Shown: piece by piece, positions 1 to 36,899 of the stretch
How positions within the stretch are numbered: the first letter of the stretch is position 1
How the letters are laid out: each line of letters opens with the position of its first letter
IMG/VR virus record: IMGVR_UViG_3300023235_000008
Span: 1-64,000 of that record
Reading direction: 5' to 3' (one strand)
DNA length: 64,000 bases
Program-made: the position numbers and the translations under genes
The notes under the pieces: model-generated
Told to the model about the DNA's origin: nothing
What the model saw: only the letters and a program-made list of their open reading frames with translations
Databases searched by the model: none

Positions 1-130
1 TCCATATATATGATACAATGGGCCTGATGCCTTTCGTATCGATTAATAGTAATAATAACCCCTTGACAGATTCCATATATATGATACAATGGGCTTGATG
101 CCTGACGTAATAGTGTGTGATATAGTAGCC
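1..130 (+). promoter_or_regulatory. Promoter-repeat array (left part runs off the window)
   Basis: TTGACA(63-68)-N16-TACAAT(85-90) with an extended TG, followed by GGGCTTGATGCCT; a second partial unit at 1-38. The same units recur at 2400-2880. Confidence 0.75.
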
Positions 131-167
131 TATTGACATACGATGCATTATGGTGTAGAGTAACTAT

Positions 168-275
168 ATGACATGCGAAATGGAAATTAATGATTGGGCA
201 CGGCACGTTGGACTATGGACGGTAAACTGCATAGAACCGATGGAAGCATTTTGGTGGACATTGAAACATGACTGA
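168..275 (+). pseudogene. Collapsed HRxDGPA-repeat gene remnant
   Basis: 35-codon leaderless ORF ending EAFWWTLKHD; an alternative frame reads WTMDGKLHRTDG, indicating deletion plus frameshift. Confidence 0.65.
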
Positions 276-873
276 ACCAAGATTTGATGCAAATGGTAGC
301 AAATATTGGTATTTGAATGGTGAACGTCATAGAACAGACGGACCAGCTATTGAATATGCAAATGGCGACAAGTATTGGTATTTGAATGGTGAACGTCATA
401 GAACAGACGGACCAGCTATTGAATATGCAAATGGCGACAAGTATTGGTATATTAATGGCTTACGTCATAGAACTGATGGCCCTGCCATTGTAAATTCAAA
501 TGGCGACAAGTTTTGGTACTTTAATGGTAAACTACATAGAGAAGATGGACCTGCCATTGAATTTGCACATGGCGACAAATATTGGTACTTGAATGGCGAA
601 CGACATCGAGTAGATGGTCCTGCTGTTGAAGATGCAAATGGCACCAAAGCTTGGTATTTGAATGACGAACGACATAGAGAAGATGGACCAGCCATTGAAG
701 AATATGGCAACATGTATTGGTATTTGAATGGTGAACGTCATAGAACAGACGGACCTGCCGTCGAAGCGGCAAATGGCGACAAGTATTGGTATTTGAATGG
801 TTTCTCCGTTCATATGGAAGACGTAATCACTGATCCAAAAGAACAGTTCTGGTGGACATTGAAACATGACTGA
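268..873 (+). CDS. HRxDGPA (MORN-variant-like) repeat protein, 7 repeats
   Basis: Repeats of about 23 aa, W(Y/F)xNGxxHRxDGPA, with conserved tail MEDVITDPKEQFWW. Confidence 0.9.
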   Translation: MTEPRFDANGSKYWYLNGERHRTDGPAIEYANGDKYWYLNGERHRTDGPAIEYANGDKYWYINGLRHRTDGPAIVNSNGDKFWYFNGKLHREDGPAIEFAHGDKYWYLNGERHRVDGPAVEDANGTKAWYLNDERHREDGPAIEEYGNMYWYLNGERHRTDGPAVEAANGDKYWYLNGFSVHMEDVITDPKEQFWWTLKHD

Positions 874-1117
874 ATATCCAACTGGTGCCAAGTTTTGGTA
901 TATTAATGGCAAACGTCATAGAACAGATGGACCAGCAATCGAATATCCAACTGGTAGCAAACATTGGTATATTAATGGCAAACTACATAGAACAGATGGA
1001 CCTGCCGTTGTACGTGTAGATGGCACCAATGGCTGGTGTTTGAATGGCATACAAGTTACTATGGAAGACGTATTGACTGAACAGGAAGCATTTTGGTGGA
1101 GAATGAAACATGAATGA
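866..1117 (+). CDS. HRxDGPA repeat protein, 2 repeats
   Basis: Same repeat; tail VTMEDVLTEQEAFWW; start overlaps the upstream stop. Confidence 0.9.
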   Translation: MTEYPTGAKFWYINGKRHRTDGPAIEYPTGSKHWYINGKLHRTDGPAVVRVDGTNGWCLNGIQVTMEDVLTEQEAFWWRMKHE

Positions 1118-1340
1118 CGATAAACAATCGTTTTGGGATAGTTTACGTATGCCACCCGACATAAGAAAAAACTGTCTTAACTGTAAGCATTTCGCATTTC
1201 ATAATAATCCCAATATACGCTATACAAATGCTAGGGATAACTGTAACCACCCGACAGCAGGAGTTCGAAAGAAACGGCGGTGCTGGGCAGCAGACAGTGA
1301 TGAAAAACGCCTTTGGAGATATAAACGATTCGTAGAATAA
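1110..1340 (+). CDS. KEFW-CxxC cassette-family small protein
   Basis: Leader MNDDKQSFWDSLRMP, CLNC plus two more Cys, terminal LWRY. Confidence 0.75.
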   Translation: MNDDKQSFWDSLRMPPDIRKNCLNCKHFAFHNNPNIRYTNARDNCNHPTAGVRKKRRCWAADSDEKRLWRYKRFVE

Positions 1341-1343
1341 CAC

Positions 1344-1371
1344 TTGACAATATTGTTGTTTTGCGTATAAT
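1344..1371 (+). promoter_or_regulatory. Sigma70-like early promoter (leaderless uvsE)
   Basis: TTGACA-N16-TATAAT, then 6 nt, then ATG at 1378. Confidence 0.8.
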
Positions 1372-1377
1372 CTTATT

Positions 1378-2403
1378 ATGAATTATTTTGACCAATCAAT
1401 ACAGCGTGTCGGCTTTGCATGTAAGTATATGCATCCCGACCAATCGCTCACCAAGAAGTTGCTGGAAGACGTTCAGCGACCGTTCAATGGCAAGACCACT
1501 ACTGCTCGTTGGCTTGCTTCACAATCATGCATTGATATAGCCGAACAGCGATTATATGAACTTGCCAAGTTTAACTGTGAATCAGTTATCAATCTTATCA
1601 AATATGTAGCCAGCTTGCCGCCTAATCAGCGTATGTTGCGCATCGGCAGTGACGTTCTACCAATGTATACCCATCCTGATTGGAAATACTTCTATAATAA
1701 TGATGTAAAACATCACGTTTCATCACGACTCAAACAGGCTGGCGACCTTGCACGTGATAATGATGTGCGACTATCAATGCATCCCGGTCAGTTTACCGTG
1801 CTTGCCAGTGACAACCCCGATATTGTAGAAAACTCTATTCGTGAGTTTGAATATCATGCTGACATTGCACGTATGATGGGTTATGGCGAAAACTTCATGG
1901 ACTTCAAAATTAACGTGCATATCTCTGGTCGCAACGGTCCCGATGGCATCGATGCCATTCTACCACGCTTGTCTACAGAAGCACGTAACTGTATCACTAT
2001 CGAGAATGATGAGAATGCGTGGGGTATTGACAGTTCACTTGACCTTGCTAATGACCTAGCACTTGTCCTTGACATACATCATCACTGGTGCCGTGAAGGC
2101 GAATACATACAGCCTACCGACGACCGATTCAAACGTGTCATTGACAGTTGGCGTGGTGTGCGTCCTACCATCCACTATAGCTTATCACGTGAGGATATCC
2201 TTATTGACCATCCTACCGATGTTATGCCCGATATGCCTACGTTGCTTGAGGATGGATACAAGAAACATAAACTACGTGCACACAGTGATATGATGTGGAA
2301 TACAGCGTGTAATCAATGGGCTGAATCATTCTTGCCATATGCTGACATCATGATCGAAGCCAAACATAAAAATCTTGCGTCTAGCGCATTGATTAACACT
2401 TGA
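1378..2403 (+). CDS. uvsE: UV damage endonuclease (UvdE/UvsE)
   Basis: Motifs GFACKY, MLRIGSD, RLSMHPGQFTVLAS, IENDE, LVLDIHHH, HYS, RAHSD, IEAKHK. Confidence 0.95.
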   Translation: MNYFDQSIQRVGFACKYMHPDQSLTKKLLEDVQRPFNGKTTTARWLASQSCIDIAEQRLYELAKFNCESVINLIKYVASLPPNQRMLRIGSDVLPMYTHPDWKYFYNNDVKHHVSSRLKQAGDLARDNDVRLSMHPGQFTVLASDNPDIVENSIREFEYHADIARMMGYGENFMDFKINVHISGRNGPDGIDAILPRLSTEARNCITIENDENAWGIDSSLDLANDLALVLDIHHHWCREGEYIQPTDDRFKRVIDSWRGVRPTIHYSLSREDILIDHPTDVMPDMPTLLEDGYKKHKLRAHSDMMWNTACNQWAESFLPYADIMIEAKHKNLASSALINT

Positions 2404-2878
2404 CATAAAGCGTATATGTGTTACAATGACTTTCGTATGGATTAATAGTAATAATAACGCATAAAAACATGTTATAATGGTGGTGATACCCGACCCACCA
2501 ATAATAAAAACAGTGGTATTATAACACATATACTCAATGCTGTCAACCCTTGCCATATATGTGATACAATGGGCTTGATGCCTGACGTATAATCATTCTA
2601 TCACCGTGAAATAAACGCTTGACAAAGTTTCTATGTGTGTTACAATGGACTGATGCCTGCGTAGTAATAATAAAAAAACGGCGTATCACTACCAGTATAA
2701 CACGTTTTCATATACTGTCAAGCAATCTTTTACCTTGACATAAAACATATATGTGTTAGAATGGACTGATGCCTACAGAATCGTTTTCAAATCAAACGTA
2801 TCACTACCAGTATAACACGTTTTCATCCATAGTCAAGTAAAAAGATTGCTTGACACAATGTATACCATATAGCATAAT
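2400..2878. promoter_or_regulatory. Dense array of forward and reverse sigma70-like promoters with no real ORF
   Basis: Forward: TTGACA-N16-TACAAT/TAGAAT at 2400, 2619 and 2735; TTGACA-N17-CATAAT at 2850; extended -10 at 2562-2570. Reverse: TTGACA-N17-TATAAT (2546-2518) and TTGAC(A/T)-N16-TATACT pairs. An exact 30-bp repeat lies at 2682-2711 and 2797-2826. Confidence 0.8.
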
Positions 2879-2880
2879 GA

Positions 2881-2937
2881 ACGTACAATAATATTGAGTG
2901 TAAAAATGCACTGTTCTGGTGGAAGATGAAAACATGA
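2881..2937 (+). pseudogene. Orphan tail of an HRxDGPA gene
   Basis: Reads TYNNIECKNALFWWKMKT*; CTGTTCTGGTGGAAGATGAAAACATGA is identical to the tails of downstream paralogs. Confidence 0.6.
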
Positions 2938-3335
2938 CTGAACCGATATGTCATACTTATGCAAATGGCGACAAGTATTGGTATCTACATGGCAAACTAC
3001 ATAGAACAGATGGACCAGCTGTTGAATATGCAAATGGCGACAAGTATTGGTTATTCAATGGTGAATCGCATAGGGAAGACGGACCAGCCATTGAAGAATC
3101 AAATGGTAGCAAGTGGTGGTTTAAGAATGGCGAAGTTCATAGGGATGACGGACCCGCCATTGAATATACAAATGGCACCAAAGAATGGTATTTGAATGAT
3201 AAACTACATAGAACAGATGGACCTGCCGTTGTACGTGCAAATGACACCGAATGGCGGTTGAATGGCGAACGTGTTACTATGGAAGACGTAATCACCGATC
3301 CAAAAGAACTGTTCTGGTGGAAGATGAAAACATGA
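2934..3335 (+). CDS. HRxDGPA repeat protein, 4 repeats
   Basis: Start at MTEPICHTY (ATGA overlap); conserved tail VTMEDVITDPKELFWWKMKT. Confidence 0.9.
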   Translation: MTEPICHTYANGDKYWYLHGKLHRTDGPAVEYANGDKYWLFNGESHREDGPAIEESNGSKWWFKNGEVHRDDGPAIEYTNGTKEWYLNDKLHRTDGPAVVRANDTEWRLNGERVTMEDVITDPKELFWWKMKT

Positions 3336-3730
3336 CTGAACCGATATGTCATACTTATGAAGATGGCACCAAACGTTGGTATACGAATGATAAACTTCAC
3401 AGAGAAGATGGACCTGCTGTTGAATATGCAAATGGTAGCAAATCTTGGTATCTACATGGCTTACGTCATAGAACAGATGGACCAGCAATCGAATCATATG
3501 GCAACATGTATTGGTATCTACATGGCAAACGTCATAGAGAAGATGGACCTGCTGTCGAAAATGTAAATGGCAACATGTATTGGTATCAATATGGCAAACG
3601 TCATAGAACAGATGGACCTGCTGTCATTTGCACGTACAACACCGAATGGCGGTTGAATGGCGAACGTGTTACTATGGAAGACGTAATCACCGATCCAAAA
3701 GAACTGTTCTGGTGGAAGTTAAGATCATGA
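3332..3730 (+). CDS. HRxDGPA repeat protein, 4 repeats
   Basis: Start corrected to the ATGA overlap (the ORF-track extension is the shifted frame of the previous tail). Confidence 0.9.
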   Translation: MTEPICHTYEDGTKRWYTNDKLHREDGPAVEYANGSKSWYLHGLRHRTDGPAIESYGNMYWYLHGKRHREDGPAVENVNGNMYWYQYGKRHRTDGPAVICTYNTEWRLNGERVTMEDVITDPKELFWWKLRS

Positions 3731-4062
3731 ATAAAAATGGAATGCATACCGATGCAAATGGCACCAAAGCTTGGTACTTTAATGATAAACTTCATAGAAC
3801 AGATGGACCTGCTATTGAAGAATCAAATGGCACCAAAGCTTGGTACTTGAATGGTGAATATCATCGAACAGATGGCCCTGCTATTGAATTTACAAATGGC
3901 GACAAACAATGGTTCAAGAATGGCAAACGTCATAGAACAGATGGACCTGCCATTGAGTTTGCTAATGGCAACAAGTATTGGTATTTGAATGGCGAACGTG
4001 TTACTATGGAAGACGTAATCACCGATCCAAAAGAACTGTTCTGGTGGAAGATGAAAACATGA
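3727..4062 (+). CDS. HRxDGPA repeat protein, 3 repeats
   Basis: MNKNGMHTDANGTKAW..., conserved tail; ATGA overlap. Confidence 0.9.
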   Translation: MNKNGMHTDANGTKAWYFNDKLHRTDGPAIEESNGTKAWYLNGEYHRTDGPAIEFTNGDKQWFKNGKRHRTDGPAIEFANGNKYWYLNGERVTMEDVITDPKELFWWKMKT

Positions 4063-4322
4063 CTGAACCGATATGTCATACTTATGAAGATGGCACCAAA
4101 TCTTGGTATTTGAATGATAAACTACATAGAACAGATGGCCCTGCCGTCGAATATGCAAATGGCACCAAACGTTGGTACTTGAATGATAAACTACATAGAA
4201 CAGATGGACCAGCTGTTGTACGTGCAAATGACACCGAATGGCGGTTGTATGGCGAACGTGTTACTATGGAAGACGTAATCACCGATCCAAAAGAACAGTT
4301 CTGGTGGAAACTAATATCTTGA
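4059..4322 (+). CDS. HRxDGPA repeat protein, 2 repeats
   Basis: MTEPICHTYEDG..., conserved tail; ATGA overlap. Confidence 0.9.
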   Translation: MTEPICHTYEDGTKSWYLNDKLHRTDGPAVEYANGTKRWYLNDKLHRTDGPAVVRANDTEWRLYGERVTMEDVITDPKEQFWWKLIS

Positions 4323-4351
4323 CATTACTACATTATATGATATATTAAATC

Positions 4352-4954
4352 ATGATGATGAAAAAACACACAATCAGTGTAATAGCATTACTAACAGCAT
4401 ATGCCGTAGGTAGCACACTATTGCACATATACCCCGAAAAACCAATGGTCCTCGTGCCCGCACCCATATCACCCGTATACGTAGAAATCCTCCCCGAACT
4501 ATATCCATGGGAAGATGCAAACGGAACACTACTAGACTGTAGTAAAGAACGTAGCGAACGTATCGCATTGGCTTGTAACATATACCATGAAGCACGTTCC
4601 GAAAGCCTACGTGGACAAGTAGCAGTGGCATTAGTAACACGTAATCGTGTCCTTTCAAAGAAATACCCCAATACATATGAAGAAGTGGTATGGGATATCA
4701 GACGTTCAGCTAAAACAAAACGTAAAGTGGCACAGTTCTCTTGGGCACTAGATGGTAAACACGATAGGGTATATGAACAACAAGCGTGGCGAACAGCTTG
4801 GGAAATCGCAGGGGATATATTAGCCAATAAATATACAGACTTTACAGAAGGTGCACTATGGTATCATACCAAAGCAGTTAATCCACGATGGAATAAACGT
4901 TTCAATGTTTCTACTATCATTGGGGATCATATCTTCTATGTCACACGAAACTGA
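4352..4954 (+). CDS. Cell-wall hydrolase, SleB/CwlJ (Hydrolase_2) family
   Basis: N-terminal TM segment; LACNIYHEARSE, GQVAVALVTRNRV, QFSW, GALWYH, IGDHIFY; leaderless promoter at 4319-4346. Confidence 0.9.
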   Translation: MMMKKHTISVIALLTAYAVGSTLLHIYPEKPMVLVPAPISPVYVEILPELYPWEDANGTLLDCSKERSERIALACNIYHEARSESLRGQVAVALVTRNRVLSKKYPNTYEEVVWDIRRSAKTKRKVAQFSWALDGKHDRVYEQQAWRTAWEIAGDILANKYTDFTEGALWYHTKAVNPRWNKRFNVSTIIGDHIFYVTRN

Positions 4955-5074
4955 TACAAAACTTGGCGGAAAGAAAATGGTCAACTTCATAGAGAAGATG
5001 GTCCAGCCGCTTATCCATATGATAACTGGGAATGGAATAAAATGACTGACAAAGAACATGGTATTTTGGAATAA
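4955..5074 (+). pseudogene. Chimeric remnant: HRxDGPA repeat fused to a WEWN cassette end
   Basis: Reads TWRKENGQLHREDGPAAYPYDNWEWNKMTDKEHGILE*; the ATG at 4938 is one A short of being in frame. Confidence 0.65.
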
Positions 5075-5219
5075 GTTACGTGAACCTATCAAAAAAGGGT
5101 GTTTCAATTGTCGGTATGAGAGAACCATACAAAAAAGTATGTATGAAAAAGATTCTAAAATGATGAATAACCCTGTTTATCCAGATGATAACTGGGAATG
5201 GAATGGCAAATGTGAATAA
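5058..5219 (+). CDS. KEFW-CxxC cassette-family protein (53 aa, not in ORF track)
   Basis: MVFWNKLREPIKKGCFNC...YPDDNWEWNGKCE. Confidence 0.7.
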   Translation: MVFWNKLREPIKKGCFNCRYERTIQKSMYEKDSKMMNNPVYPDDNWEWNGKCE

Positions 5220-5224
5220 AGAAG

Positions 5225-5284
5225 ATGGTATTTTGGAATAAGTTACGTGAACCAGTTGACAACTGGGAATGGAATGGCAAATGA
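5225..5284 (+). other. Empty cassette: leader joined directly to the WEWNG end (19 aa)
   Basis: MVFWNKLREPVDNWEWNGK*; the 5' part duplicates 5058-5086. Confidence 0.75.
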
Positions 5285-5344
5285 TATAGTATTACGTGTG
5301 GTAAATGTCATGAACGCCCGACACGTATACTGGGAATGGAATAA
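5285..5344 (+). pseudogene. Cassette fragment (CGKCHE core plus WEWN end in another frame)
   Basis: TCGKCHE matches the 22286 member; TACTGGGAATGGAATAAA follows out of frame. Confidence 0.55.
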
Positions 5345-5382
5345 ACATTGACAACATTAGTAATAACTGCTAGTATACATTA

Positions 5383-5544
5383 ATGAATAAAGAAAAGTTT
5401 TGGAAGTCATTAAGTCATAACTGTGCTAATAACAGTCGAGGATACAATCAATCAGTGTATTGCAAAATCAAATCGTGCACTTCGTCGGCAAGTATGAGGG
5501 AGTATGGTGAAGTGTTTTGGGAATGGGATGGAAATGACGGATAA
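5383..5544 (+). CDS. KEFW cassette-family protein (53 aa, not in ORF track)
   Basis: MNKEKFWKSLSHNC...C...C...FWEWDGNDG; leaderless promoter TTGACA(5348)-N17-TAGTAT-N6-ATG. Confidence 0.75.
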   Translation: MNKEKFWKSLSHNCANNSRGYNQSVYCKIKSCTSSASMREYGEVFWEWDGNDG

Positions 5545-5779
5545 AGAAAAGTTTTGGAAAACGTTACGTGAACCGTCTGAGAAATCATGTAAAAACTGTA
5601 AATGGCGATATGATATAAAATCAGTTAAACTGAATGAAGATGGTTCGGAATGCACTTCAGAGGATTACGACCATATTGGTGATATTTGTGAAGCGTGTAC
5701 AATGAATAGGCACATCAGGAGTAATAATGACACATCGAATGTTATCCTGCCTAAATGGCAATGGAATAATAAACATTGA
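5534..5779 (+). CDS. KEFW-CxxC cassette-family protein
   Basis: MTDKEKFWKTLREPSEKSCKNC...CEAC...WQWNN. Confidence 0.8.
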   Translation: MTDKEKFWKTLREPSEKSCKNCKWRYDIKSVKLNEDGSECTSEDYDHIGDICEACTMNRHIRSNNDTSNVILPKWQWNNKH

Positions 5780-5786
5780 CAACACC

Positions 5787-5929
5787 ATGGAATAAAGATT
5801 AAGTGAACCTAATAAAAAAGGTTGCTTTAACTGTCGGTTCGGACTACTTATATTGTCGTAAATGCGAACAATCAGGGTTATTCATCATTTCTGTATCCAG
5901 ACAACTGGGAATGGGATGGTTTGGCATAA
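5787..5929 (+). pseudogene. Frameshifted KEFW cassette
   Basis: LSEPNKKGCFNCRF, YCRKCEQ and YPDNWEWDGLA lie in three different frames. Confidence 0.65.
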
Positions 5930-6001
5930 TCTGAAATGTCCTACTAATCGTACAGTTGGCGTGGTTGATGCACGTTGAATTGATCGTTTTGCGTATTAGG
6001 A

Positions 6002-6290
6002 ATGGAATGGCGTGACGTAATGAAAGCCTTTTTTAAATTATTTAGAGAACTAAACGGACGTTATACTAATTACAATGGTCATAGAACTGACGGGCCATCT
6101 ATTGAACGTGTTACTATGGAAGATGGAATCATGAATGATGATGTTGTATGTGTGACAGATTCATATGGCAATAAGGCTTGGTATTTGAATGGCTTATGCT
6201 ATTGATTGTTAATGGCATCAATGACTGGTATTTACATGATAAAGAATATGATGTATTATCTGGGAAGGAAGCAATTGGGTATTGACGTAT
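6002..6290 (+). pseudogene. Decayed HRxDGPA gene fragments
   Basis: NGHRTDGPSIERVTMED joined to YGNKAWYLNG, followed by stops. Confidence 0.55.
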
Positions 6291-6519
6291 GACTGATGAT
6301 AAGGAAGAGTTTTGGAAGTCATTGACTACTATGCCTGTTATTGAGCGTTCCTGTGATAACTGTCGTTGGTTTAATGGTAAGTTTTGTATTGAGCCTATAT
6401 CTCTCCGCAATGACATTACGACTTGTATGTATGTTTATAGCGATGTTGATTATGATTCTGCGTATGTTAGTTATACTGGTTACAGTTTACCTAAATGGGA
6501 GCGTCGGGAGAATGATTGA
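6289..6519 (+). CDS. KEFW-CxxC cassette-family protein
   Basis: MTDDKEEFWKSLTTMP...CDNC...C...C...LPKWERR. Confidence 0.8.
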   Translation: MTDDKEEFWKSLTTMPVIERSCDNCRWFNGKFCIEPISLRNDITTCMYVYSDVDYDSAYVSYTGYSLPKWERREND

Positions 6520-6841
6520 ATGTAAGACTGATGATGCTGGCAACAAGTTTTGGTTTTTGAATGGTGAATATCATAGGGAAGACGGACCAGCTATTGAGTT
6601 TGCTAATGGCGACACGGTATGGTATATTAATGGCGAACGTCATAGGGAAGATGGTCCTGCTATTGAGTTTGCTAATGGCGACAAGTTTTGGTATAATCAT
6701 GACAATCGACATAGGGAAGATGGACCAGCTATTGAGTTTGCTAATGGCAACAAGTCTTGGTATTTACATGGTAAAGAAGTTACTGTGTATGATGTATTGA
6801 CTGATCCGAGAGAACAGTTTTGGTGGAAGATGAAATCATGA
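6512..6841 (+). CDS. HRxDGPA repeat protein, 3 repeats
   Basis: MIECKTDDAGNKFW...; tail VLTDPREQFWWKMKS; start corrected from 6341. Confidence 0.85.
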   Translation: MIECKTDDAGNKFWFLNGEYHREDGPAIEFANGDTVWYINGERHREDGPAIEFANGDKFWYNHDNRHREDGPAIEFANGNKSWYLHGKEVTVYDVLTDPREQFWWKMKS

Positions 6842-7005
6842 TTGAAAAAGAATCTATAGACCGGTTTGGCAACAAGTCGTGGCATGTGGGTGTGAAGCGT
6901 CATAGAGAAGTGGTGCCCGGTAGCGAAGCGACTGTTCGTTTTCAGAACAACATATGGCGTTCCCCGCTTTCCTGTTGTGTATCACATTTGGGAAGGCAAG
7001 TGTAA
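6838..7005 (+). pseudogene. Degenerate HRxDGPA-type ORF
   Basis: FGNKSWHVGVKRHRE, after which similarity is lost. Confidence 0.45.
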
Positions 7006-7165
7006 TGTCTAAGTTCAAGGTTGGAGAAAGAGTAAGAATTGGCAGGTATAAAACATATCTACAAAATGAAATGGATGGTGTGTATGAAGGCGGGTGGGTT
7101 GTTGAACCGGAGATATAATCCAACCTGTAGATACTGGATATGAAGAAATTATCAAAAGGAAAATA

Positions 7166-7363
7166 ATGATGTCTGATATGAAACCAAGAAAATTTCGACA
7201 CTGTATTTCACGAGTCTTTATTGACGGCGATGCGTGTATTACGGATGGTGTGATTACCGAGGTTGATGGAAACCAAGTTACTTTTCAAACCTACCCTGAT
7301 TGCGGCGATCCTGTTAAGATGTTCACGGTACATGAGATGTTATCTTATATTCGAAGTGAGTGA
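7166..7363 (+). CDS. Hypothetical protein
   Basis: Co-oriented 65-aa ORF overlapping an upstream small ORF. Confidence 0.55.
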   Translation: MMSDMKPRKFRHCISRVFIDGDACITDGVITEVDGNQVTFQTYPDCGDPVKMFTVHEMLSYIRSE

Positions 7364-7438
7364 AGAACGTATCGTTGCAACGGTAGGACTTTGATCCTAA
7401 TCCTTGACATATAGTAATTGTTATGATATGGTTATGTT

Positions 7439-7603
7439 ATGAATGACAAAGAAGAATTTTGGAAAGCATTGAAGTCACCTATACGTGAGTGTAAAAACTG
7501 TGCTGTTATACATTCGTATGGTATGTCTACATTAACTAACAAGTATTGTCGTGAGTATTGTATCTCATGCGATAATTTCAGTAAGTGGATATCTGATGAA
7601 TAA
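7439..7603 (+). CDS. KEFW-CxxC cassette-family protein (54 aa, not in ORF track)
   Basis: MNDKEEFWKALKSPIRECKNC...CREYCISC...KWISDE; leaderless promoter at 7404-7432. Confidence 0.8.
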   Translation: MNDKEEFWKALKSPIRECKNCAVIHSYGMSTLTNKYCREYCISCDNFSKWISDE

Positions 7604-7624
7604 TAAAGAATATCGGATGCGGTA

Positions 7625-7834
7625 ATGGTTCTGAAGCACAAGGCTGAAGCCCCTGAATGGTTAATAGCGCATGGTGCTAATATTTGGTTAATTGATTATG
7701 ACGACACTGACGATGAAACTATATTTCGTCCTATACTTAAAGCTATTGGTCAGGACGATGAAGGAATATTTGATCCGGCGTATGTTAACTATGAAGGACG
7801 TAGTTTACCTATGTGGAAGGCACGTGATGAGTAA
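7625..7834 (+). CDS. Hypothetical protein, probable cassette member that lost its leader
   Basis: C-terminus YVNYEGRSLPMWKARDE resembles the 6289 member (YVSYTGYSLPKWERREND); an out-of-frame MNNKEY at 7596. Confidence 0.5.
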   Translation: MVLKHKAEAPEWLIAHGANIWLIDYDDTDDETIFRPILKAIGQDDEGIFDPAYVNYEGRSLPMWKARDE

Positions 7835-8015
7835 GCAGGAATTTTGGAATGATTTGCGGTCGGTGCCATTATCTGACCGTGATTGTAATAACTGTTTATA
7901 TTACACACGTAATACCACGCAGAGTTGGCTTAATTGTATATATTGTGTCCAAGATGCTAAAGATAGTAAAAAGCCTGTTGGTGCTTCGTCTGGTAGTTAT
8001 TGGAAACCAAAATGA
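7827..8015 (+). CDS. KEFW-CxxC cassette-family protein
   Basis: MSKQEFWNDLRSVP...CNNC...CIYC...YWKPK; start corrected from 7692. Confidence 0.8.
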   Translation: MSKQEFWNDLRSVPLSDRDCNNCLYYTRNTTQSWLNCIYCVQDAKDSKKPVGASSGSYWKPK

Positions 8016-8196
8016 GTAAGCAGGAATTTTGGGATGCACACAACCAACACAAAGGGGTTGTGATAACTGTAAGTATAATAAAAGAATAAATGGGGGGATT
8101 TACTCAGTATGTAAGCGACCAAACCAAGTCTACGCCTGTGTTGGATTTTATGGAAAAAAATCGCAATGGGAATGGGATGGTAAGAACTATGGGTAA
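8012..8196 (+). pseudogene. Frameshifted KEFW cassette
   Basis: MSKQEFWDA, then a shift to TQPTQRGCDNC...C...C...QWEWDGKNYG*. Confidence 0.75.
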
Positions 8197-8211
8197 GATA
8201 AATACATTATA

Positions 8212-9441
8212 ATGTTATTAAATGATTTACTATTAGAATATAAAGAAGGCAAGAACCAGCACCTTCATCACGTTGAAGACATTGTATTTCACGAGGGTAA
8301 TGCTGGTGCACGTATTGCATTAAACTATATTGATAGCGTTCGTCAACTATTAGCACAGGGTGGTAACAGGCACGAAAGCATATCGGTTAAGTGGGATGGT
8401 GCGCCAGCTATTATATGTGGCATTGATCCTGCTGACGGTGAGTTTTTTGTTGGCACGAAGAGTGTATTCAATAAGACTGGTGGCAAGTTGATTAAGTCAC
8501 GTTCTGATTTAAAGAAGTATGGTTACGAGGGTGAGTTAGCAAACAAACTTATGTTAGCATTGACGCATTTATCCAAGTTAGGCATCACTGGTGTGTTACA
8601 GGGTGATATGATGTATACCCGAGATGATCTTGAGACAAAGACATTTGGTGGTGAAGAATACCTTATGTTTCAGCCTAATACGATTACGTATGCTGTTCCT
8701 ATTAATAGCGACGTTGCGAAGACTATGCGTAGATCGAAGATTGGTATTGTATTTCACACACGTTACAGTGGCGACAGCATTGGTGAAATGACGGCGGAAT
8801 TTGGTGCTAGTATTTCGGGATTGAATAGTGTATCGGATGTATGGTATGATGATGCATCTTACAAGGATTTGACTGGCATTGCATCATTAACCAAGGCGGA
8901 GAACGATAAACTTATCAGTGATATAGCGGCTACCAAACGTGCTATTAAGATTGCGAAGTTTGATGCATTGAAGAGTCAATATAGTCCATTGCTTATGACG
9001 TTTGTTAATAGTCGTATTCGTAAGGGTGATGATCAGGTTGCACATCCGCATGATTTTGCAGAAGGTTTCACTAAATGGTATGCGGCACGATTGATGCATG
9101 AGATTAGCAAATTAAAGAATCAAGACCCTGATGCGAAGCCTGTTCAGAATCGTATGAAGAAGATTGAAGAACAGAAGGAATACATGAAGCGTAATTTTAA
9201 GGGTATTATTGCTGGGTTAATGGTTTACAAGGATTTGATTGTTTTAAAGAATCAGTTATTAAACAAACTGAATAAGATTGATACGATGAAAAGTTTAGTA
9301 AAGACGGATGATGGTTACAAGGTAGTTAATCCCGAGGGGTTTGTTGCTATTGGTGCCGCTGGTGGGGCGATTAAATTAGTTGATCGTATGAGCTTTTCTA
9401 AAATGAATTTTGATGCAGCAAAAGACTGGAAAAAGACGTGA
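8212..9441 (+). CDS. Conserved T4-like phage protein (DUF6267-like)
   Basis: KNQHLHHVED, SVKWDGAPAIICG, FFVGTKSVFNK, VLQGD, FQPNTITYAVP, PEGFVA, IKLVDRMSFS; late promoter ATAAATA just upstream. Confidence 0.85.
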   Translation: MLLNDLLLEYKEGKNQHLHHVEDIVFHEGNAGARIALNYIDSVRQLLAQGGNRHESISVKWDGAPAIICGIDPADGEFFVGTKSVFNKTGGKLIKSRSDLKKYGYEGELANKLMLALTHLSKLGITGVLQGDMMYTRDDLETKTFGGEEYLMFQPNTITYAVPINSDVAKTMRRSKIGIVFHTRYSGDSIGEMTAEFGASISGLNSVSDVWYDDASYKDLTGIASLTKAENDKLISDIAATKRAIKIAKFDALKSQYSPLLMTFVNSRIRKGDDQVAHPHDFAEGFTKWYAARLMHEISKLKNQDPDAKPVQNRMKKIEEQKEYMKRNFKGIIAGLMVYKDLIVLKNQLLNKLNKIDTMKSLVKTDDGYKVVNPEGFVAIGAAGGAIKLVDRMSFSKMNFDAAKDWKKT

Positions 9442-10064
9442 GTGACGTTTCGCATTTACGCAAACTAATGAGTTCGGTTGATAAGCCGAAGCGTATTGTT
9501 GCGATTTATCCGGGACGTTTTCAGCCATTTCATTTGGGACACGCAGCAGTATATAATATTGCGAAAGAGAAATACGGTGAATGTTATATTGCTACGTCTG
9601 GTAGTTTAGATATAAAATCGCCATTTACATCGGAACACAAGCGAATAATGATGATGCGTTCTGGTATTCCTATTGATAAGATTGCGGTATGTCGTCAGCC
9701 TTATATGCCTATTGAAATATTACAGAACTTTAATCCGCAATATGATTCTGTTGTATTTTTCATCGGTGAGAAGGATATGGCATCTGATCCACGTTTTCAA
9801 TTTAAACCCACTAAGTCTGGTAAGCCTAGTTATTTCCAGCCTTGGGTAAATGATGATACGCTTGATACTTTTAATAATCAGGGATACATACGTGTTGTGC
9901 CTACGATTGATTTTACTGTAAATGGACAGTTGATGCGTTCTGCCAGTGAATTCCGTAGCATGTTTGCGAAGGCGGATAATGCTGCACAGACGGTGATGGT
10001 AACAGATATGTATGGTGTATATGACGGACAAATCCATAATATTATGAAAAACCGCTTGACATAA
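9438..10064 (+). CDS. Cytidyltransferase-like (HIGH) nucleotidyltransferase
   Basis: YPGRFQPFHLGH motif; SASEFR near the C-terminus. Confidence 0.8.
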   Translation: MSDVSHLRKLMSSVDKPKRIVAIYPGRFQPFHLGHAAVYNIAKEKYGECYIATSGSLDIKSPFTSEHKRIMMMRSGIPIDKIAVCRQPYMPIEILQNFNPQYDSVVFFIGEKDMASDPRFQFKPTKSGKPSYFQPWVNDDTLDTFNNQGYIRVVPTIDFTVNGQLMRSASEFRSMFAKADNAAQTVMVTDMYGVYDGQIHNIMKNRLT

Positions 10065-10089
10065 TTTCAAAAATAGCTATACTACAAGT

Positions 10090-10767
10090 ATGGCAAATTT
10101 ACACCCCGACGCAAACTTTATTACGGAACTTTCATTATTACTTGATTCGGTAAACGAACAGTATGTTGCTTTTTTGTCTGACAATAACAATGTTGATGAC
10201 CCGACTGAACTTGCTGATATTATGAACAGTATGTTTGAAGTGTATGATATGGATCATATCTACGTAGACGTTGGTTCAGCGACGTGTGTAACTGCGGTTG
10301 ATTGGTATATCCAGAATGCTGTTGTTGATGGTGATGGAGAGATAACGATTATGCTAGACCCATCGTCAATTAACGGTTATTGGGGTCCAGCAACTTTTAA
10401 AGATGTTGTCTTAAAGACGCTTGAACACGAAGACATTCATATGCGCCAGCGGGATCGCATGGGTGTTAATAAGTATAACAGCATTCCGAGCGGTTATATG
10501 AAGGGTGTTTTGAAAGCAGCCGAAACTGGTAATCAAAATGATATGAAGCGTATGTATTTTCGTGATCCACAGGAGTTGATGGCGCACGGACACGATATAT
10601 ATCGTGAGTTACAGCGTTTAGATAATCCACAGGAAGCGTTACGTAATCCAGAGAGTTTTCGTAATGATTTACCAACGTATGATAAGCATCGTGCGATTTT
10701 CCCACCAAATGCAAAACCATTGCAGCGGTTGTTAGGGTATGCTGCACGTTATTTCGAGTATGCATAA
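10090..10767 (+). CDS. HExxH (zincin-like) hypothetical protein
   Basis: LEHEDIHMRQ and QELMAHG; leaderless promoter at 10056-10083. Confidence 0.65.
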   Translation: MANLHPDANFITELSLLLDSVNEQYVAFLSDNNNVDDPTELADIMNSMFEVYDMDHIYVDVGSATCVTAVDWYIQNAVVDGDGEITIMLDPSSINGYWGPATFKDVVLKTLEHEDIHMRQRDRMGVNKYNSIPSGYMKGVLKAAETGNQNDMKRMYFRDPQELMAHGHDIYRELQRLDNPQEALRNPESFRNDLPTYDKHRAIFPPNAKPLQRLLGYAARYFEYA

Positions 10768-11030
10768 TGAGTGAACTCGACGCAGATATATTTGGTAACA
10801 AGTTTTGGTGGATGGATGATAAACTTCACAGAGAAGATGGACCTGCTGTTGAATATCCAAATGGCAACAAGTTTTGGTATCTTGATGATAAACTTCACAG
10901 AGAAGATGGACCTGCTGTTGAATATCCAAATGGCAACAAGTTTTGGTATCTTCATGGACATGAAGTTACTATGGAAGATGTTATAACCGATCCAAAAGAA
11001 CGATTTTGGTGGAGAATGAAAAGTGACTGA
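10767..11030 (+). CDS. HRxDGPA repeat protein, 2 repeats (isolated copy)
   Basis: Two exact 69-bp repeats; tail VTMEDVITDPKERFWWRMKSD. Confidence 0.9.
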   Translation: MSELDADIFGNKFWWMDDKLHREDGPAVEYPNGNKFWYLDDKLHREDGPAVEYPNGNKFWYLHGHEVTMEDVITDPKERFWWRMKSD

Positions 11031-22089: not shown

Positions 22090-22293
22090 ATGAATAAAAA
22101 AGAACACCAGTTTTGGAATATTTTAACCAATCCGATACCAGAACCTCGTTGTTCTAACTGTAGACACCGAGAGTATTTTAATGATACATGCTATCGTCTA
22201 CGTGAAACTGGCGAAGAAGAATGCGCTATATTTCTTATTAATGTGGTCCAAACTTATCCTTTTTGGGAATGGGATGGAACTTTTGATGAATAA
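22090..22293 (+). CDS. KEFW-CxxC cassette-family protein
   Basis: MNKKEHQFWNILTNP...CSNC...C...C...FWEWDG; leaderless promoter at 22055-22083. Confidence 0.8.
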   Translation: MNKKEHQFWNILTNPIPEPRCSNCRHREYFNDTCYRLRETGEEECAIFLINVVQTYPFWEWDGTFDE

Positions 22294-22489
22294 GAATGAG
22301 TTTATCAAGGCTTTATCTGAACCGTATGATAAAAGTTGTCTGAACTGTAAGTTTGCCAGACGGTCTGGCACAATGCCAGAGGATGGATATAATAACAAGT
22401 GTGGGAAGTGTCACGAACACGATCCAGAAATGATAAATAAACCTGACCTGTATCCAGAAGACAACTGGGAATGGAACGGCGACAAATGA
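22286..22489 (+). CDS. KEFW-CxxC cassette-family protein
   Basis: MNKNEFIKALSEP...CLNC...CGKC...DNWEWNGDK. Confidence 0.8.
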   Translation: MNKNEFIKALSEPYDKSCLNCKFARRSGTMPEDGYNNKCGKCHEHDPEMINKPDLYPEDNWEWNGDK

Positions 22490-22713
22490 ATAAAGATAAA
22501 GAACAGTTTTGGGAATCAATGGTATCGCCTGAAATCGGGTGCGGCACATGTAAGCACTTAGAACCAGATGGTGCCGAAAGTTGTGGGAGGGTGCTACTAC
22601 AGGACGAGGATGAATGCATTGTTGTATCCCGCATGGTGAGTGACAGTCACCCGAAGAGTATATACCCACATTGGGAATGGGATGGAGTTAACACAGAGGA
22701 CAATGACCGATGA
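22486..22713 (+). CDS. KEFW-CxxC cassette-family protein
   Basis: MNKDKEQFWESMVSP.GCGTC...C...C...HWEWDG. Confidence 0.8.
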   Translation: MNKDKEQFWESMVSPEIGCGTCKHLEPDGAESCGRVLLQDEDECIVVSRMVSDSHPKSIYPHWEWDGVNTEDNDR

Positions 22714-23051
22714 TATGTAAAGAAGATTTTATATTTGGATTAACGGCTTCAAGTAATGACATTGAATTCGAGAAACGGCGTCGTGAATATGCCAAAAAAT
22801 ATAAAAGGGCGAAGAGAAATGCGCTGAAAGAGTTTAAAGACACACCTACCAAAGCGCTTCTCAATATGCGATATGGTTATTTTAGGAATGAGTATAGTGA
22901 TGATGATGAATATCATAGTCGGGAAGGTGTATCCGATGCGGTGTATGAGATTCTAAGCACCCGAGAGCACATTCCGAACAAACTTGAAGGCAAACGTGCC
23001 CGTCAAGCAAAGGCGAAAATGGGTAGACATAAAGGAAGACGTGATAAATGA
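22710..23051 (+). CDS. Hypothetical basic protein
   Basis: ATGA-coupled; body ends REHIPNKLEGKRARQAKAK; weak leader-like start KEDFIFGL. Confidence 0.7.
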   Translation: MICKEDFIFGLTASSNDIEFEKRRREYAKKYKRAKRNALKEFKDTPTKALLNMRYGYFRNEYSDDDEYHSREGVSDAVYEILSTREHIPNKLEGKRARQAKAKMGRHKGRRDK

Positions 23052-23218
23052 ATAAGACTGAGTTTATCAATGCGTTAAGTGAGCCTACTAAAAAAGGTTG
23101 CTTTAATTGCAAGTTCAAATACGAGAATTGGTGTGTGACGTGTCACGAACACGATCCAGAAATTATGGCAACCCTTAGTTATCAAGAAGATAACTGGGAA
23201 TGGAACGGCGACAAATGA
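23048..23218 (+). CDS. KEFW-CxxC cassette-family protein (56 aa, not in ORF track)
   Basis: MNKTEFINALSEPTKKGCFNC...CVTCHEHDPE...DNWEWNGDK. Confidence 0.8.
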   Translation: MNKTEFINALSEPTKKGCFNCKFKYENWCVTCHEHDPEIMATLSYQEDNWEWNGDK

Positions 23219-23703
23219 ATAAAGAAAAGTTTTGGGAAGCATTGCAAGCACCGATACGCCGTGATTATTGGAATACCGAAGAGTTCGGACTTGAACTTGA
23301 AAAATGGTTTGGGTATTCTAATCTACGGGAAGCCGAACATCATCATACTTTTAACAGTATTATAAAACGGTTTCCTAACCTTCCGTCATACATTGATCGT
23401 ATTAATATTGAAAATGAACAGCGGGCTGAACAACGGCGGCGTGATTATGACACGTGGACTAGAAAGAATGTAACACTTGTTGAAGTAGATATGCTTGCTG
23501 GTGGAAAAGATAGCCATCCTGATATCAAAACAGATAGTACACAATATCTTGCGCTGATTGGTGGAGGGTTTGTTGCTGGAACGTTTAGTAAGGTTAACGA
23601 GAAGGGTAGACTAAACTTTTGGGGTGGCTATAACCAACAGTATGATAAACCGGGATATAACAGCAGCGACTGGCAAAAACTATGGGAAATCGTAACCAAA
23701 TGA
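23215..23703 (+). CDS. KEFW leader fused to an unrelated Cys-free body
   Basis: MNKEKFWEALQAP, then about 150 aa of different sequence ending LWEI. Confidence 0.75.
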   Translation: MNKEKFWEALQAPIRRDYWNTEEFGLELEKWFGYSNLREAEHHHTFNSIIKRFPNLPSYIDRINIENEQRAEQRRRDYDTWTRKNVTLVEVDMLAGGKDSHPDIKTDSTQYLALIGGGFVAGTFSKVNEKGRLNFWGGYNQQYDKPGYNSSDWQKLWEIVTK

Positions 23704-23873
23704 ATAAAGATAAAGAACTGTTTTGGAAGCGACTATCATTTGAAAAGAGTTGTAATAACTGCTTTTATTCACGTGCGTGTATATCACGATTTATGCCAAA
23801 ACCCGTAACTTGTTCACCTACCCGATTAAATGAATGGGTATGGAATAAAAAGACTTACACGAAAATGAAATGA
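23700..23873 (+). CDS. KEFW-CxxC cassette-family protein
   Basis: MNKDKELFWKRL.FEKSCNNC...C...C...EWVWN. Confidence 0.8.
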   Translation: MNKDKELFWKRLSFEKSCNNCFYSRACISRFMPKPVTCSPTRLNEWVWNKKTYTKMK

Positions 23874-30900: not shown

Positions 30901-31418
30901 CAACTGAACGAATTACAAATATTGAAATAACTGAATACAATGGTGATGTTTACAATTTAGAAGTGGAACCCAATCATGAAAATAAAGATGATCAATTTTA
31001 TATGTGTGCTGACACTGGAATCGTAATTCATAATTGTCACCCACGTGACAACATTGCTTTACGTTGGATGGCAAAAGACCTAAATCTTGGCTACGATTTG
31101 TTTGATGCGGTAATGAATGCCCGTGAACAACAAGCCAAGAATATGGCAGACAAACTAGTTAGTTACAATCTACCTGTTGTGATTATGGGCAAAAGTTATA
31201 AGCCCGGTGTGGATTACGAAGATGGGTCAAGTTCTATTCTTGTTGGATCATATATTGATGATGTGCAATATGATGTAATCCTTGACGAACCTGCTGTATA
31301 TCTAATGGCACATCCGCAAGATACGTTTAACGAAGGCGCAGAAGATTCTGTGGTTGTTGACCCTTGGCGTCAAGTACGTTCACAACATAAGACATATTGG
31401 TATGGAAATACTAGATGA
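30897..31418 (+). CDS. ugd: Split-intein C part fused to the UDP-glucose dehydrogenase C-half
   Basis: 46-aa IntC with VYNLEV and terminal IHN (31034), then C+1 CHPRDNIAL; MGKSYKPG. Confidence 0.9.
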   Translation: MTTERITNIEITEYNGDVYNLEVEPNHENKDDQFYMCADTGIVIHNCHPRDNIALRWMAKDLNLGYDLFDAVMNAREQQAKNMADKLVSYNLPVVIMGKSYKPGVDYEDGSSSILVGSYIDDVQYDVILDEPAVYLMAHPQDTFNEGAEDSVVVDPWRQVRSQHKTYWYGNTR

Positions 31419-31612
31419 ATAAGGATGAGTTTTGGCGAGCATTGACAATCCCGCCAAATGATCAACGAACATGTTCGAACTGTATTAAGAAGAATGGTCT
31501 TGAATGCTTTATTCAAGATTTGGACATGGCGCATTGGCCAGAAAACAAGTATTGTTCACGTGGATTGCATCTTGACAATAGCGTTGATAAATGGGAATGG
31601 AATGGCGAATGA
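31415..31612 (+). CDS. KEFW-CxxC cassette-family protein
   Basis: MNKDEFWRALTIPP...CSNC...C...C...KWEWNGE; ATGA overlap at both ends. Confidence 0.8.
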   Translation: MNKDEFWRALTIPPNDQRTCSNCIKKNGLECFIQDLDMAHWPENKYCSRGLHLDNSVDKWEWNGE

Positions 31613-32355: not shown

Positions 32356-32572
32356 GGAAAAGTTCTGGAAGTTATTGGCTGGTCCAACTGAAAAGTCTTG
32401 TATGAACTGTCAGTTTAAAGGCGATTATGTTACTGTTAAATGCAGTATTGATGAAAGCCCGTTTTGGGGAAATGGCAAATGGCTATGCTATAACAGAGAT
32501 GTATTGGACCACACTACATATGAACTTATTCATTATAAACAACAATGGGAATGGGATGGTGAAAGAGAATGA
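32348..32572 (+). CDS. KEFW-CxxC cassette-family protein
   Basis: MSKEKFWKLLAGPTEKSCMNC...C...C...QWEWDG. Confidence 0.8.
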   Translation: MSKEKFWKLLAGPTEKSCMNCQFKGDYVTVKCSIDESPFWGNGKWLCYNRDVLDHTTYELIHYKQQWEWDGERE

Positions 32573-33183: not shown

Positions 33184-33412
33184 CAGTAAACAAGAGTTTT
33201 GGAATGCGCTAACCCAGCCAACAAAAAGAACGTGTGATAACTGTTTCTTTAACGAAGCTACGGTTAGCACCACATCGTGTTCATTGCGGGCTGGATTAAT
33301 GTGCGATGTTCATAATGATTATATTTACTCATCGGTTGCAAACACAAGTAGCAGACCTTTTAACACGTATAAAGCAAAAAGATTATGGGAATGGGATAGA
33401 AAAAATGCATAA
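33176..33412 (+). CDS. KEFW-CxxC cassette-family protein
   Basis: MDDSKQEFWNALTQPTKRTCDNC...C...C...LWEWDR. Confidence 0.8.
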   Translation: MDDSKQEFWNALTQPTKRTCDNCFFNEATVSTTSCSLRAGLMCDVHNDYIYSSVANTSSRPFNTYKAKRLWEWDRKNA

Positions 33413-33911: not shown

Positions 33912-33912
33912 A

Positions 33913-36898: not shown

Positions 36899-36899
36899 T

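What the first reader, a model, noticed from the sequence alone, without database searches (positions are those of the whole stretch)
4938..5074. Chimera joining the HRxDGPA repeat family to the cassette WEWN end
Seen: directly after the SleB stop the frame reads TWRKENGQLHREDGPA-AYPYDNWEWNK-MTDKE. TATCCATATGATAACTGGGAATGGAAT differs by one base from the end of the 5058 cassette. The ATG at 4938 would be in frame with one extra A in GATACAAAAC. Inference: the two expanded families exchange DNA, so they may be parts of one shuffling system.
Basis: partly seen in the sequence, partly recalled or inferred. Interest (0 to 1): 0.6.

Follow-up and report, generated by a model that had tools for sequence, protein, structure and literature searches.

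The report
Deletion scar joining two phage gene families
The "chimera" is real DNA, but it is most likely the untranslated wreck of a repeat-protein gene that sits intact after the same lysis-type gene in related phages, now fused by deletion to the tail of a small cysteine-rich gene; this is ordinary gene turnover in a variable region of a T4-like phage, not a dedicated shuffling system.

Summary
After the stop of the SleB-like hydrolase (4352-4954), the same frame reads YKTWRKENGQLHREDGPA|AYPYDNWEWNK|MTDKE... The 27-mer at 5012-5038 differs by one base from 5178-5204. Five other metagenome assemblies are base-identical across the junction, so it is not a misassembly.

The "shuffling system" inference is not supported:
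- Related phages (SleB 64-65% identical) carry an intact MORN-like repeat gene right after SleB, with its ATG overlapping SleB's last codons.
- Window 4938-5008 aligns to that gene's 5' end but lacks a net 25 nt, which is why ATG 4938 is out of frame. The "one extra A" is arithmetic only.
- The rest of the gene is gone. The break is joined to the last ~30 nt of a tandem WEWN-cassette copy.
- The neighbouring cassette copies are also broken.
- This is the only such hybrid in the 230-kb record.
- There is no reverse transcriptase, no frameshift signal and no RNA structure.
- The family motifs vary at synonymous sites, so they are conserved as protein, not as DNA.

One near-identical contig (L017) carries a second allele without the HREDGPA core and with an intact neighbouring cassette, so the locus is polymorphic in nature.

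The parts
4352..4954 (+). SleB-like cell-wall hydrolase gene, intact, ending in TGA
   Evidence: Pfam Hydrolase_2 at E 2.6e-21 and PHROG endolysin at 1e-20. It ends at the same point as its homologues in related contigs.
4319..4346 (+). Sigma-70-like promoter candidate in front of SleB (TTGACA, 16 nt, TATATT, with TG). The stop codon of the upstream repeat gene lies inside the -35 box.
   Evidence: 11 of 12 consensus matches; sequence context.
4938..4975 (+). Decayed 5' end of a MORN-like repeat gene. It includes the vestigial ATG, which overlaps the SleB 3' end by 17 nt.
   Evidence: Relatives L018, L020 and L021 have an intact repeat gene whose ATG overlaps the SleB end by 14 nt. The DNA alignment keeps ATGTC. 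and AA[A/G]CTTGGCG, and the window lacks a net 25 nt.
4976..5008 (+). Surviving core of the first repeat unit (NGQLHREDGPA), read in frame 2
   Evidence: 82-88% identical to many repeat units; the best are 523-555, 229118-229149 and 139545-139514. No donor is closer than 3 mismatches in 26.
5009..5011 (.). Junction between repeat-gene DNA and cassette DNA (placed to within about 3 nt)
   Evidence: Repeat similarity ends at 5008 and cassette similarity starts at 5011. The allele in L017 differs from the window exactly over 4983-5008.
5011..5041 (+). Last ~30 nt of a lost tandem cassette copy ('c0'): (A)YPYDNWEWNK. A 2-nt loss relative to L017 has removed the canonical WEWNGK stop.
5042..5074 (+). 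Vestigial start (MTDKE) of the next cassette ('c1'). A 4-nt insertion puts it out of frame and it runs into TAA.
   Evidence: L017 reads MTDKEQFWNKLREP... in one frame here; the window has CATGGTATTTTGG where L017 has CAGTTTTGG.
5058..5219 (+). Cassette c1 as it now stands: an open 53-aa ORF (MVFWNKLREP...WEWNGKCE). Deletions of 17 and 10 nt have removed the second Cys pair.
   Evidence: the L017 version is 66 aa, with CFNC and CMAC.
5225..5284 (+). Cassette c2: head joined directly to tail (MVFWNKLREPVDNWEWNGK*), an internally deleted copy
   Evidence: 5218-5253 is 97% identical to 5051-5086, and 5252-5283 is 94% identical to 5181-5212; ORF.
5285..5351 (+). Cassette c3 wreck: the CGKC motif and the YWEWNKH* tail lie in different frames
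4938..5045 (+). Frame-0 ORF of 35 aa (MSHETDTKLGGKKMVNFIEKMVQPLIHMITGNGIK*) that reads both motifs out of frame. It ends at the same TGA as the 35-aa ORF of the L017 allele.
   Evidence: Whether it is translated is unknown.

Best explanation
The window is the first 64 kb of a 230-kb record, estimated 65% complete, of an uncultured marine T4-like myovirus. Positions 1-11,000 form a variable region in which two paralogous families are interleaved. One family is a set of MORN-like repeat genes. The other is a set of small Cys-rich genes with the pattern MNKDKEKFW..L..P..CxxC...WEW[ND]G.

In the ancestor, a repeat gene followed SleB, with its ATG overlapping SleB's last codons, as it still does in related phages. 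In this lineage that gene decayed. Small deletions in its 5' end removed a net 25 nt. A larger deletion then removed everything after the first repeat's DGPA and joined it to the last ~30 nt of a tandem cassette copy.

The join happens to keep the repeat frame and the WEWN frame continuous, but nothing starts translation in that frame. The 'chimera' is therefore a non-coding scar lying between SleB and the next, itself decayed, cassette.

The mechanism is ordinary illegitimate or short-homology recombination plus unequal crossover among tandem paralogs under relaxed selection. Shown here: the anatomy, the orthology, the reproducibility across assemblies and the polymorphism. Inferred: the order of events and the deletion mechanism.
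For: Phage type: DUF6267, UvdE and cytidylyltransferase genes, with nearest phages at about 40% aa identity; IMG/VR linear record, 65% complete.

Orthology: L018 (900-1172), L020 (1098-1508) and L021 (1449-1859) carry intact repeat genes that overlap the SleB stop. Aligning window 4880-5011 to them keeps the SleB end, the ATG, AAACTTGGCG and AATGG..CAT..GATGG.CC.GC, with a net 25-nt loss.

Boundaries: repeat similarity covers 4976-5008 and cassette similarity covers 5011-5086.

No start codon exists in the motif frame after the TGA. TGA is a normal stop in this genome, ending 79 of 268 long ORFs.

Neighbouring copies are broken too: c1, c2, c3, 5787-5934, 8012-8196, 6002-6285 and 6838-7000.

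Natural variants show the same processes. L014 lacks 727 nt, which equals the spacing of the paralogous genes at 3332 and 4059. L017 carries another allele of this junction.

Five other assemblies are identical across the junction.
Against: The L017 allele lacks the HREDGPA core but keeps 24 nt of cassette-like sequence (..SGMPDAYPYDNWEWNGK) that the window lacks. Neither allele can therefore be derived from the other by one simple deletion, so the history is more complex than a single event. It needs two deletions from a longer ancestor, or a short replacement tract.

No long, undeleted allele was seen. The relatives used as outgroup are distant (64-65% aa in SleB) and have no cassettes at this position. 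Raw reads could not be examined.
Confidence: 0.75

Rival explanations
1. Short-tract ectopic gene conversion. The ancestral state was L017-like: a small ORF running from ATG 4938 to WEWNGK*. About 26 nt of a repeat unit were then copied into it, anchored on AATGGTC to the left and CC.G..GCT to the right. This added 2 nt and broke the frame. It would be a true DNA exchange between the families.
For: L017 is identical to the window on both sides of the 4916-5176 tract of differences. Within that tract, the junction patch differs as a block over 4983-5008, 25 versus 27 nt. The seven bases left of the block (AATGGTC) already match the repeat consensus in both alleles.
Against: Repeat-gene-derived sequence upstream of the block (AAACTTGGCGG, the W of the first repeat) is present in both alleles and is orthologous to the intact gene in relatives. 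A repeat gene was therefore already here. No donor closer than 3 mismatches in 26 exists in the 230 kb held, although both flanks are 100% identical between the alleles. The record is only about 65% complete, however, so a donor could lie in the missing part.
Confidence: 0.17
2. A functional chimeric protein made by recoding: either read-through of the SleB TGA, giving SleB a repeat-WEWN tail, or a -1 slip on the A-run from ATG 4938.
For: The motif frame is the same as the SleB frame. A -1 slip of tRNA-Lys on A AAA (4958-4961) would enter it. In L017 a 10-nt deletion fuses SleB in frame to a WEWNGK-ending tail.
Against: There is no X XXY YYZ heptamer. There is no downstream structure: the fold z-score is 0.01. 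Rfam gave no hit. TGA is a common true stop. The 5' part is decayed relative to orthologues. The alternative allele lacks the repeat core altogether, so the hybrid peptide is not conserved even within the population.
Confidence: 0.03
3. A dedicated diversification system, either retroelement-type or a cassette donor/acceptor system, in which repeat genes and WEWN cassettes are exchangeable modules.
For: Both families are greatly expanded and interleaved. Conserved head (KExFW) and tail (WEWDG) modules flank variable bodies. Copies exist with a duplicated head (36608-36895) and with head joined to tail (5225-5284).
Against: There is only one cross-family hybrid. No reverse transcriptase was found in the record. 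The one difference in the 27-mer is T/G, not adenine-specific. Motif codons vary synonymously in line with genome usage. A promoter-plus-hairpin motif was seen at only 1 of 4 sites tested. The resemblance of the repeat-gene tail (DPKEQFWWKMK) to the cassette head is not significant, at E 2-7.
Confidence: 0.03
4. An assembly or sequencing artefact at the junction or in the A-run.
For: The region is repetitive and the raw reads were not available.
Against: The sequence is identical in contigs from five other metagenome assemblies. The A-run is only four bases long.
Confidence: 0.02

Closest known systems
Hyperplastic regions of T4-like phages and PeSL-mediated modular shuffling (Arbiol et al. 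2010, PMC2839356; Comeau et al. 2014, PMC4122927)
   Same: A T4-like genome has a block of small, non-essential, lineage-specific early-type genes. Insertions, deletions and replacements distinguish close relatives. Sigma-70-like promoters sit at gene junctions, with the upstream stop codon inside or next to them.
   Different: The junction studied lies inside coding remnants, not in a promoter/stem-loop motif. A stable hairpin accompanies only one of four promoter-like sites tested. Recombination here seems to use paralog homology and short direct repeats instead.
Spontaneous loss of an 'ORFanage' region in cyanophage S-PM2 (Puxty et al. 2015, PMC4503421)
   Same: Blocks of ORFan genes in a marine T4-like phage are dispensable and are lost by deletion. 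Alleles with and without the DNA coexist.
   Different: That case was one large deletion seen in laboratory passage. Here there are many small lesions and a scar, seen in natural metagenomes.
MORN repeat proteins (MORN1, MORN4, junctophilin, radial-spoke RSP1)
   Same: The HRxDGPA family has a 23-residue period. Its AlphaFold model (pLDDT 86) matches MORN structures best (Foldseek E 5e-5 to 1e-3, probability 0.99-1.0).
   Different: No Pfam MORN model is hit, even at E 10. The proteins are short (64-201 aa) and end in a helix, VTMEDVITDPKEQFWWKMKS. Their function in phage is unknown.
Diversity-generating retroelements
   Same: A near-identical short repeat pair sits at the 3' end of small genes.
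   Different: There is no reverse transcriptase, no adenine-specific pattern, and the copies are tandem paralogs.

Membership tests
Pseudogene / deletion scar | An intact orthologue at the same position in relatives | tested here: met
   L018, L020 and L021 carry an intact repeat gene overlapping the SleB stop.
Pseudogene / deletion scar | No usable start, or a disrupted frame | tested here: met
   There is no ATG, GTG or TTG between the TGA at 4954 and 5042 in the motif frame. ATG 4938 is in another frame, with a net 25-nt loss.
Pseudogene / deletion scar | Not conserved among close relatives | tested here: met
   The L017 allele lacks the HREDGPA core.
MORN repeat proteins (the HRxDGPA family) | Match to the Pfam MORN models | tested here: not met
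   Only weak DUF6745 and DUF4988 hits appear, below cut-off; no MORN model is listed at E up to 10.
MORN repeat proteins (the HRxDGPA family) | Beta-hairpin repeat fold with a period of about 23 residues | tested here: met
   69-nt period; model pLDDT 86; the top Foldseek hits are all MORN proteins.
KExFW...CxxC...WEWDG small-protein family (unnamed) | N-terminal KExFWxxLxxP head, CxxC plus two more Cys, and C-terminal WEW[ND]G within about 10 residues of the stop | tested here: not met
   The fragment 5011-5041 has only the tail. The family itself is real: 208 cluster representatives at E<=1e-3, with no Pfam or PHROG match.
PeSL recombination motif | Strong sigma-70 promoter combined with a stable stem-loop, at the recombination joint | tested here: not met
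   Promoter-like sites are found at 4319, 5348 and 7404, plus a TTGAC -35-like box 35 nt upstream of the 22090 start; a hairpin is present only at 5325-5383 (z -2.9), and the other three sites give z between -0.7 and +1.25. The joint at 5009-5011 is not at such a site.
Diversity-generating retroelement | Reverse transcriptase gene | tested here: not met
   PF00078 finds nothing in the 230-kb record; the record is about 65% complete.
Diversity-generating retroelement | Template/variable repeat pair differing at adenines | tested here: not met
   The single difference is T versus G.
Programmed frameshift or read-through | Slippery site plus a stimulatory structure, conserved in relatives | tested here: not met
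   Only an A4 run is present. The fold z-score is 0.01. There is no Rfam hit. The feature is not conserved in L017.

The most novel reading that the evidence does not exclude
The 260-nt tract 4916-5176 may be a natural hotspot of templated or repair-driven rearrangement. Two alleles that are otherwise 100% identical over about 1 kb of flanks differ there by six indels and one 26-nt block, with almost no point changes. The expanded families (about 55 ORFs with the KExFW head and 15 intact MORN-like genes in 230 kb) may form a fast-turnover accessory arsenal, for example against host defence, that diversifies by head/body/tail recombination. The repeat-WEWN join would then be a failed product of that process.
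Probability: 0.15. Interest if true: 0.55.

Novelty: new member of a known kind. Interest (0 to 1): 0.28.

Why it matters
Taken alone, the finding is a gene wreck of the kind expected in the variable regions of T4-like phages, so it needs no new mechanism. It is still a clean natural example: the intact ancestral arrangement in relatives, the scar, a copy-number variant and a second allele are all seen in environmental assemblies. The context is more interesting than the scar. This one uncultured phage carries about 55 ORFs with the same N-terminal module. About 30 of them end in the WEWDG tail and belong to an unannotated small Cys-rich family with about 200 clusters in public data. It also carries 15 intact MORN-like repeat genes. 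Both families have unknown function.

Tried and rejected
- Megablast of 4300-6300 against GenBank phages gave no match.
- An IMG/VR scan for GATGGNCCNGC...TGGGARTGGRAYGG gave one hit in a high-GC contig, L013. It has no repeat or cassette gene and is a chance match. The scan is also limited: the trailing GG requires WEWNG/WEWDG, so it would not match the window's own WEWNK junction, and records of the window's genome may be left out.
- The AlphaFold model of a cassette protein was too poor for a fold search (pLDDT 61.5). The Atlas look-alikes are unnamed viral clusters.
- I tested whether the repeat-gene tail (MEDVITDPKEQFWWKMK) is a captured cassette head. A head HMM scores the tails at only E 2-7, so this is not significant and was dropped.
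- The alignment of ATG 4938...CAT to the 'MHTDA' leader subfamily is 1 nt short of the norm. I first took this as support for a single-base loss. The orthologue alignment replaced that reading.
- The word-index protein search with the cassette alignment found almost only the phage's own proteins. The exhaustive search was needed.
- The direction of change between the window and L017 alleles could not be settled.

Full report
**What the sequence shows**

The SleB-like cell-wall hydrolase gene runs from 4352 to 4954 (Pfam Hydrolase_2, E 2.6e-21). Past its TGA, the same frame reads YKTWRKENGQLHREDGPAAYPYDNWEWNKMTDKEHGILE and stops at the TAA at 5072-5074. Three pieces make up this reading:
- The segment 4976-5008 (NGQLHREDGPA) is 82-88% identical to many units of the 69-nt repeat family.
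- The segment 5011-5086 is 86% identical to 5177-5253. It therefore corresponds to the end of one tandem cassette copy plus the start of the next.

ATG 4938 is in another frame. One more A in the four-base run 4958-4961 would join the frames.

**Is it an artefact?**

Contigs from five other metagenome assemblies are identical here:
- L002, L003 and L004 over 4300-8300.
- L001 up to its end at 5199.
- L014 over 4214-5102.

A misassembly or a homopolymer error is very unlikely.

**Genome context**

The window is the start of a 230,059-bp IMG/VR virus record, linear, with a CheckV completeness estimate of 65%. Its genes include UvdE, DUF6267 and a cytidylyltransferase. The nearest phages are Methylophilales phage Melnitz, pelagiphage HTVC008M and the cyanomyoviruses, at about 40% amino-acid identity. 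This places it among marine T4-like myoviruses. All three stop codons are in normal use. No tRNA and no Rfam family was found in the window.

**The two families**

The HRxDGPA family:
- It has 15 intact genes and two wrecks in the record. They cluster at 0-11 kb, 139 kb and 228.7-230 kb.
- All but one of the 15 intact genes end in a variant of the tail V.MEDVITDPKEQFWWKMKS; the gene at 139596-139036 carries an unrelated C-terminal domain instead.
- Pfam does not call it MORN.
- A confident model (pLDDT 86) matches MORN1, MORN4, radial-spoke and junctophilin structures best. It is therefore MORN-like in fold.

The cassette family:
- It consists of proteins of about 55-90 aa with a KExFWxxLxxP head, CxxC plus two more Cys, and a WEW[ND]G tail.
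- It has no Pfam or PHROG match.
- An exhaustive profile search finds 208 cluster representatives, nearly all of 53-113 aa (a few up to 166 aa), and those inspected show the same architecture.
- A head-only HMM hits about 55 ORFs in this one record.
- Codons within the motifs vary at synonymous sites in line with genome usage (Gly GGA 7, GGC 8, GGT 5, GGG 1; Phe TTT 27, TTC 11). The motifs are therefore kept as protein, not as a DNA recombination signal.

**What the fragment is**

Contigs of a related phage lineage (L018-L021, SleB 64-65% identical) carry an intact repeat gene directly after SleB. Its ATG lies 14 nt inside the SleB end. In the window, ATG 4938 lies 17 nt inside.

The DNA alignment keeps the SleB end, ATGTC., AA[A/G]CTTGGCG (the Trp of the first repeat) and AATGG..CAT..GATGG.CC.GC. 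Between the ATG and that TGG the window has 26 nt where the relative has 51. Window 4938-5008 is therefore the decayed 5' end of the orthologous gene. The net 25-nt loss is why the ATG is out of frame. The remaining repeats and the characteristic tail are gone, and the break abuts the last ~30 nt of a cassette copy.

A more distant lineage (L005-L008, SleB 67% identical over residues 28-196) has neither family at this position. The cassettes are therefore a lineage-specific expansion.

**The neighbourhood is a graveyard**

Many neighbouring copies are damaged:
- c1 (5058-5219) has a 4-nt insertion that orphans its MTDKE start, and deletions of 17 and 10 nt that remove its second Cys pair.
- c2 (5225-5284) is head joined to tail.
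- c3, 5787-5934 and 8012-8196 are frameshifted.
- 6002-6285 and 6838-7000 are wrecked repeat genes.

**Population variation**

L014 is identical to the window from 4214 on but lacks 727 nt. This equals the distance between the paralogous genes at 3332 and 4059, which points to unequal crossover.

L017 is identical to the window over 4024-4915 and 5177-5302. Inside 4916-5176 it differs as follows:
- A 10-nt deletion in the SleB end, between ATCAT direct repeats.
- A replaced block at 4983-5008 (25 nt versus 27 nt) that has no HREDGPA.
- A canonical WEWNGK stop.
- An intact 66-aa c1.

In L017 the ATG opens MSHETDTKLGGKKMVVMASGMPDAYPYDNWEWNGK. Each allele holds a short unique piece, and neither piece has a donor in the 230 kb held. 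The order of events therefore stays open. It could be two deletions from a longer ancestor, or a short conversion tract.

**Against a dedicated or translated system**

- This is the only repeat-to-WEW hybrid in the record. A degenerate IMG/VR pattern scan returned only a chance hit, but it requires a WEWNG/WEWDG end and would not match the window's own WEWNK junction.
- There is no reverse transcriptase.
- There is no slippery heptamer, and no RNA structure at the junction (z 0.01).
- Promoter-like sites sit at gene junctions, but only one of four tested has a hairpin. The promoter/stem-loop motifs that mediate shuffling in other T4-like phages (PMC2839356, PMC4122927) are therefore not evident.
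- The weak likeness between the repeat-gene tail and the cassette head is not significant.

**Verdict**

The hybrid is real and reproducible, but it is best read as a deletion scar in a fast-turnover variable region. This is comparable in kind to the known plasticity of T4-like hyperplastic regions and to ORFan-block loss in cyanophage S-PM2 (PMC4503421). The inference of a single shuffling system is not supported. The expanded families themselves, and the dense cluster of indels that separates the two alleles, are the parts worth a further look.

Noticed in passing
whole 230-kb record; in the window e.g. 1110-1337, 5383-5776, 22090-23870, 31415-34342, 36608-37329: About 55 ORFs share the N-terminal module KExFWxxLxxP. 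About 30 of them end in WEW[ND]G; others carry unrelated bodies. This is a very large paralogous family for one phage. It has no Pfam or PHROG match but about 200 clusters in public data.
   Followed up: partly
window 4916-5176 versus L017 (Ga0208770_1030156): Two alleles are identical over about 1 kb of flanks, yet differ by six indels (10, 2, 2, 4, 17 and 10 nt), one 26-nt block and three point changes packed into 260 nt. Indels far outnumber substitutions. In the window, the +2 and -2 changes cancel, so a 35-aa frame-0 ORF ends at the same TGA in both alleles.
   Followed up: partly
L017 329-1011: In this allele a 10-nt deletion between ATCAT direct repeats removes SleB's conserved GDHIFY end. 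It fuses SleB in frame to a 38-aa tail ending in WEWNGK.
   Followed up: partly
window 3332-4322 versus L014 (Ga0208646_1010173): L014 lacks 727 nt, exactly the spacing of the paralogous repeat genes starting at 3332 and 4059. This looks like a natural copy-number variant made by unequal crossover.
   Followed up: partly
window 2892-2916: This is the only place in 1-10951 where contigs L001 and L004 differ from the window (a 9-nt indel and two substitutions). It lies at a 29-nt relic of a repeat-gene tail (..LFWWKMKT*) just upstream of the gene at 2934.
   Followed up: no
window 36608-36895: A cassette with its head module duplicated in frame (MNKQQFFKALSEPTVKAKR followed by MNKEEFWQALSQP...). 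It is called as one 96-aa protein in public data (P0001).
   Followed up: no
window 4319-4324, 5348-5353, 5776-5781: The TGA stop of the upstream gene lies inside a TTGACA -35-like box. The motif AATAAACATTGACAACA recurs at 5338 and 5765.
   Followed up: partly
window 6453-6501 and 7771-7819: The ORFs at 6289-6519 and 7625-7834 share a different C-terminal end (YV.Y.G.SLP.W..R.E; 71% identical DNA). This may be a second tail type within the array.
   Followed up: no
genome 139596-139036 (minus strand, outside the window): One repeat-family member lacks the usual tail. Its two repeats are fused to a C-terminal domain of about 120 aa with unknown function.
   Followed up: no
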